From assembly GCF_000315625.1 (NCBI RefSeq), contig NW_005434541.1, positions 1 through 48,172 of the forward strand: a stretch of 48,172 nucleotides of DNA, read 5' to 3'. Both the position numbers and the translations under genes were made by a program. The stretch is from Guillardia theta CCMP2712 (taxonomy: Eukaryota; Protista; Cryptophyta). The notes under the pieces were generated by a model that did no database searches, was not told where the DNA came from, and saw only the letters and a program-made list of their open reading frames with translations. This document shows, piece by piece, positions 1 through 11,352 of this stretch (within the stretch, counting starts at the first letter, position 1; each line of letters opens with the position of its first letter).

Positions 1-3000
1 GAACGGAGGGATGGAACGAAGTGGGGGTGGAGAGATGAGGATGGAGGAGGGGGAGGGGAAGAGAGAGAATCCAGAATGAAATACAACCTGCGAAGGAGTG
101 GTCGTTCCTCCTCGAGCATGTACCACTTGTCCAGGATCTTGATCATCGGTGTCAGGGGAAGCAGAGAGTAGGGAGGAAGAAGGGGACAAGAAATGAGGAA
201 GGGGAGGAAGGGGAGGGAGAGGAGGAGGAGGAAGAGGAGTGGGGAGGGAGAGGGAGAGGAGAGGGAGAGGATGGTGAGTACGGGATGATGATGATGAGGA
301 GGAGGAGCAGGGAGAATGCATGAGAGTGTCTCACTTGCGTGTCGTCCTCCTCCTGGGCTGCCGGCTTGATCTCGTTTCCCCGTCTGAGTTGCTCTCCAGA
401 CTGTCTGGTGGCGGGACAAGAGATAAGGAGGAGGAGAGCAGCAGCCAAAAAGATATGATTTCAGGTTACAACCTACCCCTACAGAGAGAGAGAACGAGGA
501 GAGCGAGAGCTGAGGAGAGGAAGGGAGGAGGGAAGGAACGTCGAGCTGAAGGAGGAGGTAGGGAGGAGGGAAGGAACGTCGAGCTGAAGGAGGAGGTAGG
601 GAGGACGGAAGGAACGTCGAGCTGAAGGAGGAGGAAGGGAGGAGGGAAGGAACGTCGAGCTGAAGGAGGAGGTAGGTGGGATGTTGGAAAGGAGGAGAGA
701 GGGAGGGACAAGGGACCGACCGTTTGCCTTCTTGTCTTCTTTGGCTTTCATCTGGAGATGCTGCTTCAAAGCAATGGCCGTGATGACTGGAGGAAAGGAA
801 CGAGCGTGAGGAACAGGAGGGCATCGCGAGGAGGAGGAAGGTGAGGAGGAGGAGGGAGAGGAGGAGAAAGGCAGAGGTGCTGCAAAGAAATCCAAAGTAG
901 GCGAGGACGAGGTGAACTGAGGACGAGGGTGAGGTGAGGAGGAGGGTTGGATGGGAGGAATAGAAGGTACGCAGGAGGCGGAGTGAAAGGAGCACGAAAC
1001 AAGTCACTTCACCGTCACTAAGGTGGACGACAACTCTGCCCATAAACGCGTCTGCCTGATCTTCGTTGTTCTCGCCCCACCCGTAATCCTTGTCCTTGAT
1101 AGTGACCTGGAGGAACCAAGACTCCTGTGAGTAGGAGGAGAGGCTGACGGGGAGAGGAGGAGGGAGAGAGAGATGGTCTAAGGACGACTAAGTTGCGGTA
1201 TCGAAACTGCTGTCGGAGACGAGCGGGAAGCAACGAAGCAATCAAGGACGTGAGCAGAGAACGATATGACAGGCGGAGAGGAGAGTGCTAGGAGAAGAGT
1301 ATGGCGAGTATAAGGTGAAAGAGGAGCAACATTAGCAGGAAGTGCCTGGAGGAGGAGGAAGGGAGGCGGGGAGGAGGAGAGGAGGAGGAGAGGAGGAGCC
1401 ACCTGAAGAGACTGGTTCATGCTTGTCACTCCGTAAGAGAAAGTCTCGTTGAAGTTGGGGTCGAGCGTGTAGGGTTTGATCTGTGCAGGTGATGAGGAAG
1501 AGTAACTCGCTGGTAGAGGGCAGACTTCGGTCTTGAGGGGTGGGACAGGACAGCCCAGGAGAGAGACTTCGGCAAAAGGCCTGGCAGAGAAAGCGTGAGT
1601 GAGTTTCACAGGGTAGCAACGGAGGAAAACGAGGGGAGGAGAGCAGGATGGTAGGGAAAGGAAGAGGAGAGAAAGAGGTGGGGGTGATGCGGTGGAGATA
1701 GCTAGCAGCGGTAGCAGACGCCAGAGCATTGGTAGTGGAAGTGTTGGTTGGAGGAGGAAGGAATGTGACCGGGACGAGAATAAGGAGTAAAAGGAGAGGA
1801 GGCGGGGAGGGGGGGAGGAGGAGGAGCAAACGTCAGGGCTGTACACCTGTCGCGAGCATCCCAAGCCCAGAATGGTACCTCCGACCCTGTCAAAGAGGTT
1901 TTACTTCAACGTTTCCTCCTCCTCTCCTCTCTTCACGTGTTCTTCCCGCTCGGTCTGTTCGTCAGGTTTTGGCTTCCACCACAGTGACGTCCAACTCGCC
2001 GCTGGTGGATAAGAGTGAGAAATCAAACATGGGGAGGCAGCAAGAAGAGACGAGGGAGAAGAAAAATGAAGAATCTGGGAGAAGAGGGAGGGAGGAAGGG
2101 AGGGAGGGAGGGGAAAAGAGGAGGGTGAATGGAAGAAGTGGGAGTAGGGAGGGAAGGAGGAAGAAGAGGGAGAGAGGAGGAGGAGGGAGAGAAGAGGAGG
2201 GAGTAGGGACGAGGGAGTAGGGAGGAGGACGAGGAAGTAGGGAGGAGGACGAGGGAGTAGGAAGGAGGAGGAGGCAAGAGAGAAGAGGACCAAGAAATGG
2301 AGAAAGACAGAGGGGAAGGGAGGGTGGCAATAGAAGGGCATGAGACTCATTCATCGCCCACCAGAGTGGCCCGTAAGTCTCCCACAGGTAAGGGATGATG
2401 TCGCTGGTGTGCACAATGGAGTCTGAGCCATGACCTCAGGAGACTCGACACGACAGGACGAGCACGTGGAGAAACCTGTGTTCGGGTCGACAAGCAGCGG
2501 CAGGTCGCACTTCCCCCCCTTCTGCTGAGCCTCACACCTCCAACGACCCTGCCGTGCGAGGTCAGCGGGCCTACGGCACGTAGCAGCGCGGAGGACGTGC
2601 CTCCCGGAAGACGGTGTCGCCAAAGTCTGTGACCTGCTCCCTGGGGCAGGGGTAGCAGATGTAATCAAGGTCTAGCACGCTCATCACTTCACGGATCTGC
2701 CTGCACACGTCCGAGTTCTGCGGCAGGGTGAGGTTTCCATCCCCAGAAGCCGCCCTCCTCCACCTCGAACTCATAGAGCCGCAGCAGAAACCTCGGTCTG
2801 TATGCTGCTAGGACGTCTTTGTGGATTCGGTCCCCAAAGTTGAACCGCAGCTTGCTGGCTAGACTGGATGAGATCCTTGATGGGGAGCAGAGATCATCAG
2901 CAAAGAAGGACAGGTGGAGCAGGTTCACCGGTCCATGGTCTCTCGGAGGAACGGGACAGCATAGTAGAACCCGTACCTTTGGAAATCGTGAGCATGTTCT

Positions 3001-5390: not shown

Positions 5391-8300
5391 TTGGATGTTT
5401 TGAAAGGTGGCCTGAATCCGAATCCATCAATCATGGACGAAGCTTCGTCCATCTCTAACGCCAACACCATTGCGGGCAATGGAGTAGTTGACGAGGAGGC
5501 AAAGAAACCTGATTCTAAGAGGAGGAATTCAAAGCTCAAGCCTCTCCCTCCACCACTCCGTGAAAGGAAACGAGCTGTGATGATCAGACTTCAACCTCGG
5601 AACCTTGTGAAGCATGGCTTGATTCCGGAAATTTCCTGGCTCAAGTATTACCATAATGAGAATCAGCTCGAGGTCCAGTTGATAGACAAAGGGAATCGCT
5701 ATGTTTGTCAAGACGGCGAGGTTCGCGATTTCAAGAGCTTCAGGGACGTCTCGAAGGCACAGTTCGCTGATGAGCTGGGCCTAGAGGAGATGAAGGACGT
5801 GTGGTTTATCAGTGAATTGCAAGGTGCTCCAGGACGAAGCTTGAGAGAGCTAGAAGCTCAGCTTGACAGCATGAGCTCTTCACGTTTGGAGGACGAATGT
5901 TCCGGTGATGAGGCTTATGGAACTCCTTCACAGAATGAGACGCGGCGGTCGTCTTCTGTGACAGAGACGACGAGGACATGCAAACCCGACATCTCAGCCA
6001 AGTCTCATGCCGCACCCCAGAATTGGGGGAAGAGCAAATTTCAAAACATACAAGGCAAGAAGTACCGACGAAGGAGTCAGAATTTCACAACTGTGATACA
6101 TCCGGAAAGAACCTACGCCAAGCGATCCTTGTTTATCTTTGATTTGAATAATCCACTGAGAAGGGCGATCATCTCAGGCATTGAATCTCCTTGGTGGGAT
6201 AGATGCGTCCTTTCGGTCATCTTTCTCAACACCTTTTTCCTCGCCATGTACGATCCCTTCGATACTCCAGACTGGCGAGAGTGCGAGCTCGGAATCACCG
6301 ACCCTTATGGATATTGTAGTTGGCACAATGAGACATGGAGGCTGGCTCCAGCTGCGGGGTCTATGCTACTGTCGGGAAAGTCATGGCCACCTTTCCATCG
6401 AGACTTCTTGGATTTCTCATCCAAGATCTTCTCGGCTTTCTTCATCCTGGAATTCGTTGCCAAGATCATTGCCCTTGGGTTTATGGTGGGACCCAACACT
6501 TATCTACGAGATGCCTGGAACTGGTTGGACCTTTTGGTTGTCATCATCGGATGCCTGGACTTCATGCCTTCCTCCAACGGAAATTCGACGTCCAACTTGA
6601 GCGCCCTTCGTTCACTGAGACTTCTTCGGCCTCTGAGGGCGATCAACAGGCTTGAAGAGCTCAAATTCTTCGTGGTCCTCGTGTTTAAGGCGGTTCCCAT
6701 GCTGATGAACGTCTTGCTGATCTGTGCTGTGCTGTTTCTACTCTTTGGAATTCTCGGCCTGGACTTGTATCAAGGTCTGAAACCATACTTCCTCGTGCTT
6801 TGCTTGTTGATAACTCGTTCGGACCGCAGGCGTCTTGAGGGGGAGGTGCTACGACATCGAAACAGGGATTCCAGGACAAGATGTATGCTCCAAGGGTCGA
6901 ATGGTGAACGAGGAGACATACTTCTGGATCACCAAGGGGATGGACGTGACATCTTCGAGTCACGTTGGGGGGATGTTCCTGTGCCATGCAGGTGAGGAAT
7001 GTCTCCTCCTTGGACAAAACCTCGGCCGGGGTTTGATCCACTTCGACGACATCGGTGAGCTGGAGCTGCTGTGTGCCGTTTGCAGCCTCGTCCTGACTCC
7101 CTCCTCTCCTGCAGGGCACTCGCTGCTTGCGATCTTTCAAATCGTCACTCTAGAGGGCTGGGCTGACATCTGCTATGCTTTGCAGGATGCTGCCGGTTTC
7201 TGGAACTTTATATACTTCCTTGCATTGATCTGCCTTGGATCTTTCTTTGCTGTCCAGCTGTTCTTGGTCGTTATCTCAAACCAGTATGCCTTCTTGATGG
7301 AACATCAACAGAAGAAACTCCCTGCGGATTCTGGAAAATCCAGCATTCTCGAGGTAAAGCGTCCTTCACTGCAAAGATCAGGGTCACTCAGCAATGTGTT
7401 GGCATCTGATCCAAAGAGGCTTGACGGTTTTGCGAGATGGAAGTTTGTCATGAAGACTTTCGTCAAGTCGGAGCTATTCGTCAACTTCATCCTCCTCGTC
7501 ATCTTCTGCAACACCATCAGCATGGCGCTCGACGGCATCTGTGAGTTCGAAACTCACTCCTGGTGTGCTCCAATGAAGGCCAGCATGGAGATCGCAAACA
7601 TTGTCTTCACCTTTATCTTTGCTCTCGAGATGTTTCTCAAGGTCACCTTGCTCGGGCCCCAGAGATACTTCGGAGTCGCCACTAACGTCTTCGACTTCAT
7701 CATCGTCGTCCTTAGCTTCCTCGAGGTCTTCAGCGGAGGTTTTGCAAACGTCTACAAGTGTTACACCACGTCCCCGACCGAGGCAGACTTGAATGTAACC
7801 CTGTACTTGCCCACCAGCGTGAGCCAGGCCTTCCTCTCCGACGATGACATGGCTGCCCTTAGTTTTGACAAGGTGATCAGGTCAGATGAGGGAGACCTCA
7901 AAGTCAACCCATGGTTCTACTACACGTGCGGGAGTGGGAGTTTCGTCTCTCTGCTAAGGGCGCTAAGGCTCTTCCGCCTGGTGAAGCTGCTCAGCGCCTT
8001 CCCGGAGCTGCAGAAACAAGTCATGATCCTGGGCGAGGTGGTGAAGTCAGTGTTCGCTCTTATCCTCCTCATGGCCTTCTTCCTCATTATCTTCATGATC
8101 CTTGGCATGAATCTCTTCGGCGGCCTCATCACCACAGAGTGGGACGCGTCCTCCTTGCAGAAGGGCCAGGAGGTCTTCGTGACTTTCGCCAACGACTCCA
8201 ACGGCGGCATCGCCCGCCATGGCATCATCTACCAGTTCAAGGGAACCGACCCGGTAGCTCCGTGGAAGGTGAAGATCGAGTTTGCAGATGTGGAGCCGGC

Positions 8301-11300
8301 GATAAACAGGTCGGTTGGAGGGCTGCTGGACAAGGACGGGATGGCCTGGTGCTCGACCCTGGACGATGCATCGGGAGCCGTGCCGTACATCTCCAGCATC
8401 GTCCCGAGATTTCACTACAACAACCTCGGCCAGGCGTTTATCACCTCCTTCCAGGTGCTGACGATCGCCAACTGGAACGATGACCTGTACGACACCACAG
8501 CGAGCGCGGGAGGCAACAGCGCAGTGTTCTTCTGCATGATCGTCATCGTCGGCAACTGGGTCATCTTCAACCTCTTCGTCGCTATCCTCATCTCCAAGTT
8601 CATGGACTCCAAGGCGGAGAACCTCAAGAAGAACATGAGGGACATGGAGAAGGCCTTCCAGGACGTGTTTGCAGACCTCAATGAGGAGGACCTCGTGAGG
8701 TTCGTGGAGAAAGTCTTCACATCTCTCGACGTTGACTCCTCCGGCGTGATCGACATCTACGAGCTGAGACACGCTCTGGGGAAGCTGGGGATGCAGCTGG
8801 ACATCTCCTCGGTACGCGATCTCCTCCGTGAGTTTGACCACGATGGCAGTGGAGGAATCTCGTTCCAGGAGTTCCTGGTGCTCATCAAGTCGCAACTTGA
8901 CAAGATAGCGAGCAAGGACACGAGGGAGAAGCTGAGAGACTCGGGGAAGAGCTTCCGGTCGGAGGAGCTTGAGTTCATCGGGAGGGTGGAGGTGCATTCC
9001 AACGAGGAGGAGGAAGAGCGAGGGACGGTGAAGGGCCTGAAGCAGGCGATCGAGCATCCCTTCTTCGACAGGTTCATCCTCGTTTGTATCGTGCTCAGCA
9101 CTGTCACGCTATCGCTCGACAACAAGTACATCCCGGAGGGCAGCAGCATGGGAAGGTTTCTCTCGGGGACCGAGATCTTCCTCAACCTCGTCTTTACCAT
9201 GGAGATGATCGTCAAGATCCTCGCCTGCTCGTTCAGGTCCTACTTCGCATCTTCTTGGAACCGTCTCGACATGTTCATCGTCATCACCAGCGACCTTGAT
9301 ATGATCCTGACGCTCGTGCATGTCGAGCAGTCGCTCAGCCTCTTCAAGTCTCTGCGAGCCTTCCGTCCTCTCGCAAGGATTCACGGTCTTCGTATTCTCC
9401 TCGAAGCCATGTTCCTCGCTGTCGCTCCTGTCATCAACACCGGCGCCATCGCCGTTGCCTCCTGCCTCCTCCTCGGCATCCTCGGCCTCCAGCTGCTCGG
9501 CTCCCAGCTGGGCTACTGCAGCGACGCGGCAGTATGGAGCAAGCTACAGTGCGACGGGATAGATGATGGGGGGAGCCCGAGGAAGTGGGAGAGCTACGTG
9601 ATGAACTTTGACAACCTCGGGCAGGCCGTCCTGACGCAGCTGATGATCGCAAGCCAGGACGACTGGCCGAGCCACATGCTCGCCGGGGTTGACTCGACGG
9701 GCAAGGTGACGGGACCCCAGCAGAACACCAGCATGTCTCTTGTTGTCTTCTACCTCATCTCCTTCCTCGTCACGAGCTCGGTGATCGTCAACATGTTCGT
9801 TGCCGTGTGTGTGGACTGCTACAACACGACGCTGGTGGCTGACGGGACCAGCCAAGTGGAGGAAGAGAGAGAGAAGCTGTGCGAAGGCCGGATCAGCGAC
9901 ACTCCGGCCCAGTCCATGGCCCTCTCGATCATCACGAGCGTCCCGTTCGAGATCCTCATGAACGTGCTAACTGTCGTCCAGATCTGCTGCATGATGCTCG
10001 GGAGCTGGAAGCAGTCTGAGGCCCAGCACCAGGTCGACGTGTACAGCAACTTCTTCTTCACCTTCTTCTTCGGCGCCGAGTGCATCCTCAAGTTCGTAGC
10101 CCTCTCTCCTCGCCGCTACTTCAAGGGATGGGAGAATCGCCTCGACTATTTCATTGTGGTCTCCAGCTTCGTCTCCACCTCCGTGGAGGCCGTTGGGAAC
10201 CTGCTGAACCCTGCTCTCCTGCGATCCGTCCGCCTCATCCGCCTCGTCCGCATCCTCCGCATCCTCCGCATCCTCCGAAGCGTCAACGGCCCGCAGGAGA
10301 TCCTCTCTGCCATCGCCGGATCGACTGCCTCCATCCTGAACCTGCTCGTCCTCATAGGCGTGCTGTTCTTCATCTATGCTGTCATAGGTGTCGACGTCTT
10401 CGGCGGCCTCTGCGTCGATGGTGATCAGAACTCTGCCGGACTGCGAGCGGTGCGGTGCCTCATGACCAGCGAGGACCGCCTGCTCGATCGCCATGCGCAC
10501 TTCCAGGGTATGGGAATGGCCTTGCTCACGCTCCTCCGCACAGCGACGGGGGACGCGTGGGGGGAGGTGATGGGGAGTCTTTCCCTCACGGCATCTCGCC
10601 GTGAGCCCATGGCTGCTGACGTCTGGCTGGAGGTGACCCGAGCTCTCTCGCCGCAAACATCCAACATCACCGCTCTCACCTCCTCGTCCTCCTCGTCCTC
10701 CTCGTCCTCCTCCTCGTTATCTCGCCGGAGTCACGGGCGACTGGTTCGGGATACTGTCATGGGGCCTCGGCGGGGAGAGGAGGAGCAAGAAGCGGCTCGG
10801 ATCCTCGCCCTGGGCCCGGAGTTCCCTGGAGTCTCCATGGCTGTGGCCAAGTTCGCACTCCAGCAGTGGCTTGCGAGCGTCGAGGGGCAGCAGGAGACGC
10901 ATGACTGGCCGCTGCCGACGCCGGAGGCCGAGCAGTGGGTCCAGCTGGCAAGGATGGCGTTGCCCAACTGTCTGACAGGAGCGGAGATGAAGAACCTGAG
11001 CGAGGCCGGGCTGGCCGACTGCTCCATCCCGGGCCACTTCCACTCGTCCGGCTCGCTCGATTGCCCGTCGACGTGCGGGCTGCCACTGCTGTGGTGCTCT
11101 GTCTTCCTGTACTCCTTCTTCGGACTGTCGGCCTACGTGATGCTGCAGCTGGTGATCGGCGTGTTGATGGACCAGCTCTCTGCTCGGCAAACGGAGGAGA
11201 AGTTGATGGGGGCCCGGCACGTGCCGGGCCGGGAGGAGCTGACCATCGCTGTCCTGCAGAGGATGTATCGCAGGTGGCTGTGGAGATTGAAGGAGGAGGA

Positions 11301-11352
11301 GAAGAGGCAGAGTCAGCAGCAGAGGAGGATGAGCATGATGTCATGGAGCTGA
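5391..11352 (+). CDS. Four-domain (4x6TM) voltage-gated Ca2+/Na+-type cation channel alpha subunit with an internal EF-hand pair
   Basis: Four repeats with WNxLD/FD-type S3 motifs and Arg-rich S4 segments (LRSLRLLRPLR; LRALRLFRLVK; FKSLRAFRPLAR; RSVRLIRLVRILRILRILR). P-loops are TLEGW, TIANW, SQDDW and TGDAW; S6 segments include NLFVAIL and NMFVAV. Introns at 6775-6829 (joins the two long ORFs) and 7055-7114. The 5' end is uncertain (track start is TTG; first in-frame ATG at 5433; possible upstream exons from about 4.8 kb). Confidence 0.95.

What the first reader, a model, noticed from the sequence alone, without database searches (positions are those of the whole stretch)
7147..10560. Non-canonical E-A-D-D selectivity filter in a four-domain channel
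Seen: aligned on the conserved Trp, the filter residues are E (TLEGW, 7153), A (TIANW, 8467), D (SQDDW, 9658) and D (TGDAW, 10552). Repeat II also has N where Cav channels have the extra D. Known: Cav1/2 use EEEE, Cav3 EEDD, Nav1 DEKA, Nav2 DEEA and NALCN EEKE/EKEE/EEEE. Inference: a Cav3-like ring that has lost both repeat-II carboxylates, so it may have altered or weak Ca2+ selectivity and represent an independent selectivity solution.
Basis: partly seen in the sequence, partly recalled or inferred. Interest (0 to 1): 0.72.

Follow-up and report, generated by a model that had tools for sequence, protein, structure and literature searches.

The report
Algal four-domain channel, Glu/Ala/Asp/Asp pore
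An intact voltage-gated channel gene of the alga Guillardia theta, related to animal T-type calcium channels, has alanine where those channels have a pore glutamate; the change is conserved across a group of marine relatives, but what ions the channel passes has never been measured.

Summary
The four pore residues are Glu (GAG, 7153), Ala (GCC, 8467), Asp (9658) and Asp (10552). An ungapped phmmer alignment to human Cav3.2 puts TIANW on TQEDW. The window is Guillardia theta. The gene (5433-11352, two short GT-AG introns, about 1934 codons) is "Guillt9", XP_005822036.1, in the four-domain channel survey of Pozdnyakov et al. 2018. That paper maps its filter in a figure but never discusses it.

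The alanine is not an error or a one-off. About 25 relatives from Guillardia, Hanusia and environmental metagenomes carry Ala at this site. A few carry Ser or Cys instead. Only one paralogue, on contig C10 of the same genome, has Glu (EEDD). All share an EF-hand pair in the II-III linker and large extracellular loops.

The clade scores and trees nearest to Cav3. The direction of change (loss of Glu, or Ala reverting to Glu) is unresolved.

Acidic residues sit elsewhere in the pore mouth: Asp at III+1 and a D-D-S-E ring at +4. Weak Ca2+ selectivity is therefore plausible but unproven, and the strictly Ca2+-selective DEEA channel CaV4 argues for caution.

Read evidence was unavailable. The scan had noted the EEDD paralogue elsewhere, but in my look-ups it had not noted E-A-D-D on other DNA.

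The parts
5433..11352 (+). Whole gene of the four-domain voltage-gated cation channel (ATG to TGA), about 1934 codons after splicing
   Evidence: ORFs. Start ATG and stop TGA. The N-terminus matches the Hanusia phi transcript P0001. Pfam Ion_trans hits in both ORFs.
6775..6829 (+). Intron 1 (55 nt, GT-AG, phase 1); it joins ...LDLYQG to VLRGRCYD and restores the frame between the two ORFs
   Evidence: Sequence. The frame shifts between ORF 5391-6995 and ORF 6835-11352. The intron is inferred from the splice signals and the frame; no reads were available.
7055..7114 (+). Intron 2 (60 nt, GTGAG...CAG, in frame)
   Evidence: Sequence. The Hanusia transcript P0001 and all relatives read FDDIG-HSLLAIFQ without these 20 residues.
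7147..7161 (+). Repeat I pore loop TLEGW; filter Glu at 7153-7155 (GAG); +4 Asp at 7165-7167
8461..8475 (+). Repeat II pore loop TIANW; filter Ala at 8467-8469 (GCC); +1 Asn at 8470-8472; followed by N-D-D (+4 and +5 Asp at 8479-8484)
9652..9666 (+). Repeat III pore loop SQDDW; filter Asp at 9658-9660; extra Asp at +1 (9661-9663)
10546..10566 (+). Repeat IV pore loop TGDAWGE; filter Asp at 10552-10554; +4 Glu at 10564-10566
6597..6650 (+). S4 voltage-sensor helix of repeat I (Arg at every third position)
   Evidence: the string matches Guillt9 in Pozdnyakov 2018 Table S2
7948..7995 (+). S4 of repeat II
9334..9393 (+). S4 of repeat III
10216..10284 (+). S4 of repeat IV (seven Arg)
8131..8418 (+). 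Insert of about 95 residues in the repeat II S5-P turret, directly upstream of the Ala-bearing pore loop; predicted small beta-barrel
   Evidence: The turret is 105-130 residues in the clade against 23-34 in Cav1, Nav and Picozoa. AF2 gives pLDDT 83 and pTM 0.76. VIA-align finds Tudor/SH3-like rows at Z 5-7. Foldseek finds nothing at E <= 0.001.
8728..8871 (+). Pair of canonical EF-hand loops (DVDSSGVIDIYE and DHDGSGGISFQE) in the II-III linker
   Evidence: Pfam EF-hand_7 at 1.4e-11 plus EF-hand_1, 5, 6 and 8; calmodulin hits in the PDB; coordinates
10567..11085 (+). Very long repeat IV loop between pore loop and S6 (about 175 residues, with a poly-Ser run at 10681-10716)
   Evidence: TGDAW to the end of S6 spans 205 residues here and 157-200 in clade members, against about 51 in oyster Cav3. 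It is collinear with the Hanusia transcript, so it is not an intron.
11254..11292 (+). IQ-like motif LQRMYRRWLWRLK in the C-terminal tail
   Evidence: listed for Guillt9 in Pozdnyakov 2018 Table S3

Best explanation
This is an intact nuclear gene of Guillardia theta for a voltage-gated four-domain (4x6TM) cation channel. It belongs to a marine-protist clade whose nearest characterised relatives are T-type (Cav3, EEDD) channels. The narrowest pore ring is Glu/Ala/Asp/Asp, and the repeat II position is deliberately small and uncharged: Ala in most members, Ser or Cys in a few. Shown: the gene's identity and integrity, the alignment of the four filter residues, conservation of the small residue across the clade, arginine-rich S4 helices in all four repeats, and an EF-hand pair in the II-III linker. 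Inferred: three inner-ring carboxylates, no Asp at II+1, and acidic residues moved to III+1 and to the +4 ring (D-D-S-E) should bind Ca2+ less tightly than EEDD or EEEE pores. The channel would then open on depolarisation and carry a mixed Na+/Ca2+ current (Ca2+-permeable, with weaker Ca2+ block of monovalent flux). Ca2+ that enters would feed back through the built-in EF-hands. The confidence given is for the whole statement: above 0.9 for identity and conservation, about 0.5 for the permeation step.
For: Four Ion_trans repeats and EF-hands. Best PDB matches are Cav3.2, Cav3.3 and Cav3.1 at E 1e-112 to 1e-102, against 1e-79 or weaker for Cav2, Nav and Cav1. The ungapped alignment puts Ala on Glu and Asn on Asp, and the MSAs agree. 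The gene is collinear with the Hanusia transcript at 78-79% identity, with no stops over about 1934 codons. Repeat II filter states: Ala in the window, in G. theta C25 (also in its MMETSP transcript P0200), in P0006, P0121, P0123, P0125 and P0166, and in 14 of 15 further metagenome loci; Ser in the Hanusia paralogue and in L022; Cys in the Hanusia orthologue; Glu only in G. theta C10. Ala is coded by GCC and by GCA. The EF-hand clade has SH-aLRT 100, and Cav3 lies on its side of a 100-supported branch away from Cav1 and Nav. Spafford 2023 reports that Cav3 without the II+1 Asp becomes Na+-permeable, and that a neutral non-Gly residue at that site goes with Na+ permeability.
Against: There is no electrophysiology for any member. 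Honeybee CaV4 (DEEA at position 0, DEED at +4) also has three carboxylates plus Ala, yet excludes Na+. The window's +4 ring D-D-S-E and its Asp at III+1 could likewise keep high Ca2+ affinity. The Cav3 affinity rests on a 23-row quick tree without NALCN, Cch1 or most protist clades. The published large tree leaves deep nodes unresolved.
Confidence: 0.55

Rival explanations
1. The channel is still a highly Ca2+-selective voltage-gated calcium channel. The missing repeat II carboxylates are functionally replaced by Asp at III+1 and by the acidic +4 ring (D-D-S-E), so E/A/D/D is a neutral re-arrangement of charge and not a change of selectivity.
For: CaV4, with DEEA plus DEED at +4, is strictly Ca2+-selective. 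The window has seven acidic residues at positions 0, +1 and +4, against six in human Cav3.1 (EEDD, II+1 Asp, DVNG). Within the clade, a repeat II carboxylate (at 0 or +1) and Asp at III+1 are mutually exclusive in 10 of 12 rows, and all 2-3 independent contrasts go the compensating way.
Against: The contrast test has no power (p 0.5). Two lineages (G. theta C25 with its Hanusia copy, and locus L030) have neither a repeat II carboxylate nor Asp at III+1. Loss of the II+1 Asp alone makes Cav3 channels Na+-permeable according to Spafford 2023. That author also rates the +3/+4 ring as much less consequential for selectivity than the +1 site.
Confidence: 0.3
2. The gene is a decaying or non-conducting copy (a pseudogene, or a voltage sensor without permeation), and the Ala marks a dead pore.
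For: No expression evidence for this gene could be gathered here.
Against: The frame is open over about 1934 codons with two canonical introns. The gene is 78% identical and collinear with an expressed Hanusia transcript. The pore-loop motif T-x-A-N-W-N-D is nearly invariant across relatives more than one substitution per site apart. The G. theta paralogue with the same filter is present in the MMETSP transcriptome.
Confidence: 0.04
3. The Ala is an artefact: an assembly error, or a misalignment of the repeat II pore loop in which the true filter residue is a nearby acidic one.
For: Two Asp residues lie close by, at +4 and +5.
Against: The alignment to Cav3.2 is ungapped from the P-helix through S6 and is anchored on the conserved Trp in all four repeats. 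The same residue occurs in independent assemblies from many samples. The +4 Asp is also present in the EEDD paralogue, so it is not a shifted filter residue.
Confidence: 0.01

Closest known systems
Animal and choanoflagellate Cav3 (T-type, low-voltage-activated) calcium channels, e.g. human Cav3.2 (PDB 9ayg)
   Same: Four 6TM repeats. They are the best sequence matches (E 1e-112). Repeat I has the identical TLEGW. Repeats III and IV have Asp rather than Glu (S-x-D-x-W, TGD-x-W). The I-II linker is short and has no evident Cav-beta binding site. In the tree, Cav3 lies on the clade's side of the branch that separates it from Cav1 and Nav.
   Different: Cav3 is described as always EEDD with Asp at II+1. 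Here repeat II has Ala and Asn. Asp sits at III+1, and the +4 ring is D-D-S-E rather than DVNG. There is an EF-hand pair in the II-III linker, and the repeat II turret and the repeat IV loop are very large. The clade sits beside the Cav3 clade, not inside it.
G. theta paralogue on contig C10 (P0004/P0199): EF-hand-bearing channel with E-E-D-D
   Same: It belongs to the same clade and the same genome. It has the same EF-hand linker, the same repeat II turret domain, and the same N-D at II+3 and +4.
   Different: It keeps, or regained, Glu (GAG) in repeat II (TAEGW), and has Asn rather than Asp at III+1.
Nav2 / CaV4 (DSC1, BSC1, honeybee CaV4) with DEEA filter
   Same: The inner ring has three carboxylates plus one alanine, and there is an acidic ring at +4.
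   Different: The Ala is in repeat IV, not II. These are members of the Nav lineage with a one-residue-shorter repeat II loop. They have no EF-hand linker. They are not close in the tree (Nav rows).
Na+-permeable Cav3 variants (cnidarian Cav3b; the Lymnaea Cav3 variant in which the II+1 Asp is neutralised)
   Same: They have a Cav3-type pore without the repeat II +1 Asp. The repeat II turret influences selectivity (and the abstract).
   Different: Those channels keep Glu at the repeat II filter position. Here both repeat II carboxylates are absent, and this is fixed in a whole clade, not in a splice or isoform variant.
Catalogue of protist four-domain channels (Pozdnyakov et al. 2018, Sci Rep 8:3539)
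   Same: This very gene is entry Guillt9 (XP_005822036.1). Its S4 strings, its 'GTSQ' III-IV motif and its IQ motif match the window. The paper reports a great variety of filter motifs in protists.
   Different: The text discusses Lys-, Arg- and His-containing filters and several odd ciliate and green-algal motifs, but not E/A/D/D, its clade-wide conservation or the EF-hand linker. The figure that maps the filters could not be read here.

Membership tests
[quoted passage not shown] | Four tandem 6TM Ion_trans repeats in one chain | tested here: met
   PF00520 matches once in the exon 1 ORF (2.1e-35) and in four stretches of the main ORF (9.4e-135). Full-length alignment to Cav and Nav structures.
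[quoted passage not shown] | Arg/Lys-rich S4 helix in each repeat | tested here: met
   Read directly from the translation. All four S4 strings are also listed for Guillt9.
[quoted passage not shown] | Re-entrant pore loop with conserved Trp two residues after the filter residue in each repeat | tested here: met
   TLEGW, TIANW, SQDDW and TGDAW align on the Trp with Cav3, Cav1 and Nav.
Cav3 (T-type) calcium channels | EEDD filter ring | tested here: not met
   The ring is E-A-D-D. Cav3 is stated to be always EEDD.
Cav3 (T-type) calcium channels | Asp at repeat II filter +1 | tested here: not met
   Asn (AAC) at 8470-8472.
Cav3 (T-type) calcium channels | Placement inside the Cav3 clade | tested here: not met
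   In the quick IQ-TREE tree the oyster and coral Cav3 rows form their own 100-supported pair. The window's clade is a separate 100-supported group next to it. Sampling was limited.
Cav3 (T-type) calcium channels | Helix-loop-helix gating brake at the start of the I-II linker; low-voltage activation | not tested
   The I-II linker is only about 55 residues. No model or recording was made.
Nav2 / CaV4 (DEEA) | DEEA ring with Ala in repeat IV and a one-residue-shorter repeat II loop | tested here: not met
   The Ala is in repeat II. The repeat II loop has the full Cav length (compare the Nav1.5 row).
NALCN / Cch1 | EEKE/EKEE-type ring and charge-poor S4 helices | tested here: not met
   There is no Lys in the ring and the S4 helices are Arg-rich. 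NALCN scores only E 1.6e-15 in the PDB search.
EF-hand-bearing four-domain channel clade of Guillardia, Hanusia and environmental-metagenome relatives (unnamed) | EF-hand pair in the II-III linker plus a turret domain of about 100 residues in repeat II and a long repeat IV loop | tested here: met
   Pfam; precomputed Pfam domains of P0001-P0006 and P0121-P0125; turret alignment; clade support of 100.

The most novel reading that the evidence does not exclude
The E-(A/S/C)-D-D channels are a distinct, undescribed family of marine-protist excitability channels. They would have reached Na+-permeable, fast depolarising conduction without any pore lysine, by emptying repeat II of charge and moving acidic residues outward. 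They would couple this pore to a built-in EF-hand Ca2+ sensor and to an extracellular Tudor/SH3-like cap on the repeat II turret. That would be an origin of sodium-carrying four-domain channels independent of animal Nav1 and NALCN.
Probability: 0.22. Interest if true: 0.72.

Novelty: new variant of a known kind. Interest (0 to 1): 0.46.

Why it matters
Selectivity in four-domain channels is usually explained from a handful of animal rings: EEEE, EEDD, DEKA, DEEA and EEKE. This clade has a conserved ring with a small neutral residue in repeat II. It also offers natural variants at that one site: Ala, Ser and Cys, and Glu in a paralogue of the same genome. These are ready-made material for testing two things. 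One is how ring asymmetry and the +1 and +4 acidic positions set Na+/Ca2+ preference. The other is whether the competing rules (the II+1 'beacon' rule, and the CaV4 precedent of a three-carboxylate ring) hold outside animals. It also bears on how cryptophytes, which are abundant marine flagellates, generate electrical and Ca2+ signals. The practical value stays modest until someone records currents.

Tried and rejected
No stretch was reported as human-like.

2. Joined model. Searches used the exon ORFs by reference: 5391-6995, and 6835-11349, which reads through the in-frame intron 2. In scripts, exon 3 was translated on its own.

3. Short-fragment search. A word search with a 255-residue piece (repeat II pore loop to EF-hands), meant to catch short transcriptome fragments of other cryptophytes, found nothing. 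Because of the tool's word and length limits, this says little about their absence.

4. Literature. Full-text searches for EADD, E-A-D-D and 'E A D D' together with 'selectivity filter' found no paper. Figure contents are not indexed.

5. Published filter call. The supplement of Pozdnyakov 2018 has no filter table. I could therefore not read the published filter assignment for Guillt9.

6. Turret domain. Foldseek against the PDB gave nothing at E <= 0.001. VIA-align gave only Tudor/chromo/PsaE/SH3-like barrels at Z 5-7, below the level that shows kinship.

7. Charge compensation. The test of a repeat II carboxylate against Asp at III+1 had only 2-3 independent contrasts (p 0.5). It is suggestive only.

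8. Single loss of Glu. This was not established. The AU test borderline rejects keeping all non-Glu rows together (p 0.023, a post hoc grouping).

9. NCBIfam. One scan failed because of a frame slip in my coordinates. I dropped it, because that library covers prokaryotes.

10. Exhaustive protein search. The claim does not rest on absence of relatives.


Full report
**What is there.** The window is contig C133 of an 87.1-Mb assembly in 669 contigs. The best protein matches are from Hanusia phi and Guillardia theta. Specific strings of the gene match entry Guillt9 (Guillardia theta, XP_005822036.1) in the supplement of Pozdnyakov et al. 2018: all four S4 helices, the III-IV motif GTSQ and the IQ motif LQRMYRRWLWR. 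The organism is therefore G. theta, and the gene is already in a published comparative dataset.

**Gene model.**
- Two long ORFs on the + strand, 5391-6995 and 6835-11352, are joined by a 55-nt GT-AG intron at 6775-6829.
- A second intron of 60 nt at 7055-7114 is in frame. It is absent from the Hanusia transcript and from all relatives, which read FDDIG-HSLLAIFQ.
- The rest of the ORF is collinear with the Hanusia transcript: 79% identity with 14 gap positions in 1391 columns. I see no further introns.
- With ATG at 5433 and TGA at 11350-11352, the model has about 1934 codons.
- I did not build or search a joined protein. The exons were searched by reference.

**The observation.**
- Pfam finds Ion_trans once in the first ORF and in four stretches of the second, plus an EF-hand pair.
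- phmmer against PDB sequences ranks human Cav3.2, Cav3.3 and Cav3.1 first, at E 5.7e-112 to about 1e-102. Cav2.2 follows at 3.8e-79, then Nav1.5 and Cav1.2.
- The printed alignment to Cav3.2 is ungapped around the pore loops. It places TLEGW on TLEGW, TIANW on TQEDW and SQDDW on SKDGW.
- MAFFT alignments with oyster and coral Cav3, several Cav1 and bird Nav1.5 give the same columns for all four repeats, including TGDAW on TGDNW.
- The codons are GAG (7153), GCC (8467), AAC (8470), GAC (9658), GAC (9661) and GAC (10552).
Repeat II lacks both the filter Glu and the +1 Asp.

**Is it real and conserved?**
- The Hanusia orthologue (78% identical) reads TICNW, with Cys.
- The G. theta paralogue on contig C25 reads TIANW. 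It appears as P0002 and P0005, and as the MMETSP transcript P0200. Its Hanusia copy reads TISNW.
- Environmental proteins P0006, P0121, P0123 and P0125 read T[IM]ANW.
- P0166 reads FQADW. It has Ala with Asp at +1, and it also lacks the repeat I Glu.
- A scan of JGI metagenome contigs with the repeat II profile gave 15 more loci with the full turret. Fourteen read T-x-A-N-W and one reads TQSNW. None has Glu.
- Ala is coded by GCC in some loci and by GCA in others.
- Repeats I, III and IV are Glu, Asp and Asp throughout, apart from P0166.
- Some of these contigs come from marine metagenomes, including a Tara Oceans project. They carry eukaryotic neighbours such as an MCM gene. The sampling sites of the JGI loci were not looked up.
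- The single exception is the G. theta paralogue on contig C10 (P0004). It reads TAEGW with codon GAG, and is therefore E-E-D-D.
- A small uncharged residue in repeat II is thus the conserved state of a whole clade, not a lesion or an error.

**Relationships.**
- A quick IQ-TREE tree (23 rows, 1357 columns, LG+C20) gives the EF-hand clade SH-aLRT 100.
- An environmental family, P0007, is its sister. That family has a C2 domain and pore loops LQEDW, TTSDI, SQDNW and TSDNW.
- The two Cav3 rows lie on the same side of a 100-supported branch that separates them from Cav1, Nav and other protist rows. This agrees with the score gap.
- Sampling is thin, and the large published trees leave deep nodes unresolved. 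I therefore call the clade Cav3-like, not Cav3.
- Inside the clade the EEDD paralogue pairs with the EADD protein P0121 (support 91).
- Forcing all non-Glu rows into one clade costs 10.2 log-likelihood units (AU p 0.023, a group named after seeing the tree). At least two changes are needed either way.
- Whether Glu was lost more than once, or regained once (GCA/GCG to GAA/GAG is one step), stays open.

**How it probably works.**
- The S4 helices are arginine-rich in all four repeats, so voltage gating is expected.
- At position 0 the ring has three carboxylates.
- At +1 the residues are G, N, D and A. The only Asp sits in repeat III, not in repeat II as in Cav1, Cav2 and Cav3, nor in repeat IV as in NALCN.
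- At +4 the ring is D-D-S-E. Human Cav3.1 has DVNG there, Cav1.2 has DSED and CaV4 has DEED (table quoted; window residues).
- The pore mouth therefore has not lost net charge. The charge has been moved away from repeat II positions 0 and +1.
- Two published rules give opposite forecasts. Spafford 2023 reports that Cav3 channels without the II+1 Asp become Na+-permeable, and that a neutral non-Gly residue there goes with Na+ permeability. Bertaud et al. 2024 show that honeybee CaV4, with three carboxylates plus Ala (DEEA) and an acidic +4 ring, excludes Na+.
- I favour reduced Ca2+ affinity and a mixed Na+/Ca2+ current, with confidence about 0.5 for this step. Both repeat II carboxylates are missing, and two lineages of the clade (C25 and L030) have no compensating Asp at III+1.
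- In the clade, a repeat II carboxylate and Asp at III+1 are mutually exclusive in 10 of 12 rows, and all 2-3 independent contrasts go the compensating way. This cannot reach significance.

**Surroundings.**
- The clade shares three further features. The first is a canonical EF-hand pair in the II-III linker.
- The second is an insert of about 95 residues in the repeat II turret, just before the Ala-bearing loop. AlphaFold2 folds it confidently (pLDDT 83, pTM 0.76) into a small beta-barrel. The barrel resembles Tudor/chromo/SH3-like barrels only weakly, at Z 5-7.
- The third is a loop of 160-200 residues between the pore loop and S6 in repeat IV.
- The turret domain is also present in the EEDD paralogue, so it is not tied one-to-one to the Ala.
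- A Picozoa channel with EF-hands has EEEE and a short turret.

**Comparison and novelty.**
- The gene is a member of the four-domain voltage-gated cation channel superfamily.
- It fails three defining Cav3 tests: the EEDD ring, the II+1 Asp, and placement inside the Cav3 clade.
- It is not Nav2/CaV4 or NALCN.
- The gene itself is catalogued (Guillt9), and protist filter diversity is a published theme.
- The text of that paper does not mention this motif. No indexed paper text contains EADD or E-A-D-D together with 'selectivity filter'.
- New here: the small neutral repeat II residue defines a conserved clade. Natural Ala, Ser, Cys and Glu variants exist. The acidic residues are redistributed.
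- Earlier notes of this scan list several other odd filters in this genome (K-D-D-D, S-S-R-D, D-D-K-D and others), and the EEDD/EF-hand paralogue. Unusual rings are therefore common in G. theta, which tempers the surprise.

**Limits.**
- There is no functional data for any member.
- The taxonomic identity of the environmental members is unknown.

Noticed in passing
window 8131-8418: The repeat II S5-P turret carries an insert of about 95 residues that is conserved through the clade. AF2 folds it (pLDDT 83) as a small beta-barrel with only weak Tudor/chromo/SH3/PsaE-like matches (Z 5-7). An extracellular barrel of this kind on a channel turret seems unusual.
   Followed up: partly
window 10567-11085: The repeat IV loop between pore loop and S6 is about 175 residues, against about 20-30 in Cav3. 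It has a 12-Ser run at 10681-10716. It is collinear with the Hanusia transcript and similarly long in all clade members.
   Followed up: partly
window 8728-8871: Two canonical EF-hand loops sit in the II-III linker, at the midpoint of the four-repeat chain. This recalls the EF-hands between the two 6TM halves of plant TPC1 (from my own knowledge, not tested). They are shared by the whole clade and by a Picozoa EEEE channel.
   Followed up: partly
P0001 (Hanusia phi transcript), residues about 440-460, against window 6775-6829: The Hanusia protein model carries 20 extra residues exactly where the window has its 55-nt intron 1. This is probably a retained in-frame intron in that transcript model.
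   Followed up: no
P0166 (ENA, 1934 aa; its cluster includes a fragment labelled Collodictyon in EukProt): This clade member has a one-residue deletion that removes the repeat I Glu (FTM-GW). Repeat II reads FQADW (Ala, with Asp at +1) and repeat III reads TGDNW. It is an even more reduced ring, and the acidic +1 residue has swapped from repeat III to repeat II relative to its sister P0006.
   Followed up: partly
L038, L042, L043 and P0007 (environmental): The sister family to the clade has a C2 domain. Its pore loops are LQEDW, TTSDI (Ser, no Trp), SQDNW and TSDNW.
   Followed up: no
L037, L039, L044-L046 (JGI metagenome contigs): Environmental four-domain channels with a full Cav3-like set (TLEAW, TQEDW, SIDGW, TGDNW). 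Their organisms are unknown. If they are protists, EEDD channels reach beyond choanoflagellates and animals.
   Followed up: no
window 195-2290: Purine-rich (GA/GGA) tandem repeats and strong GC skew lie at the start of the window, which is also the contig end. One is a 38-nt unit repeated 4.5 times at 507-676.
   Followed up: no
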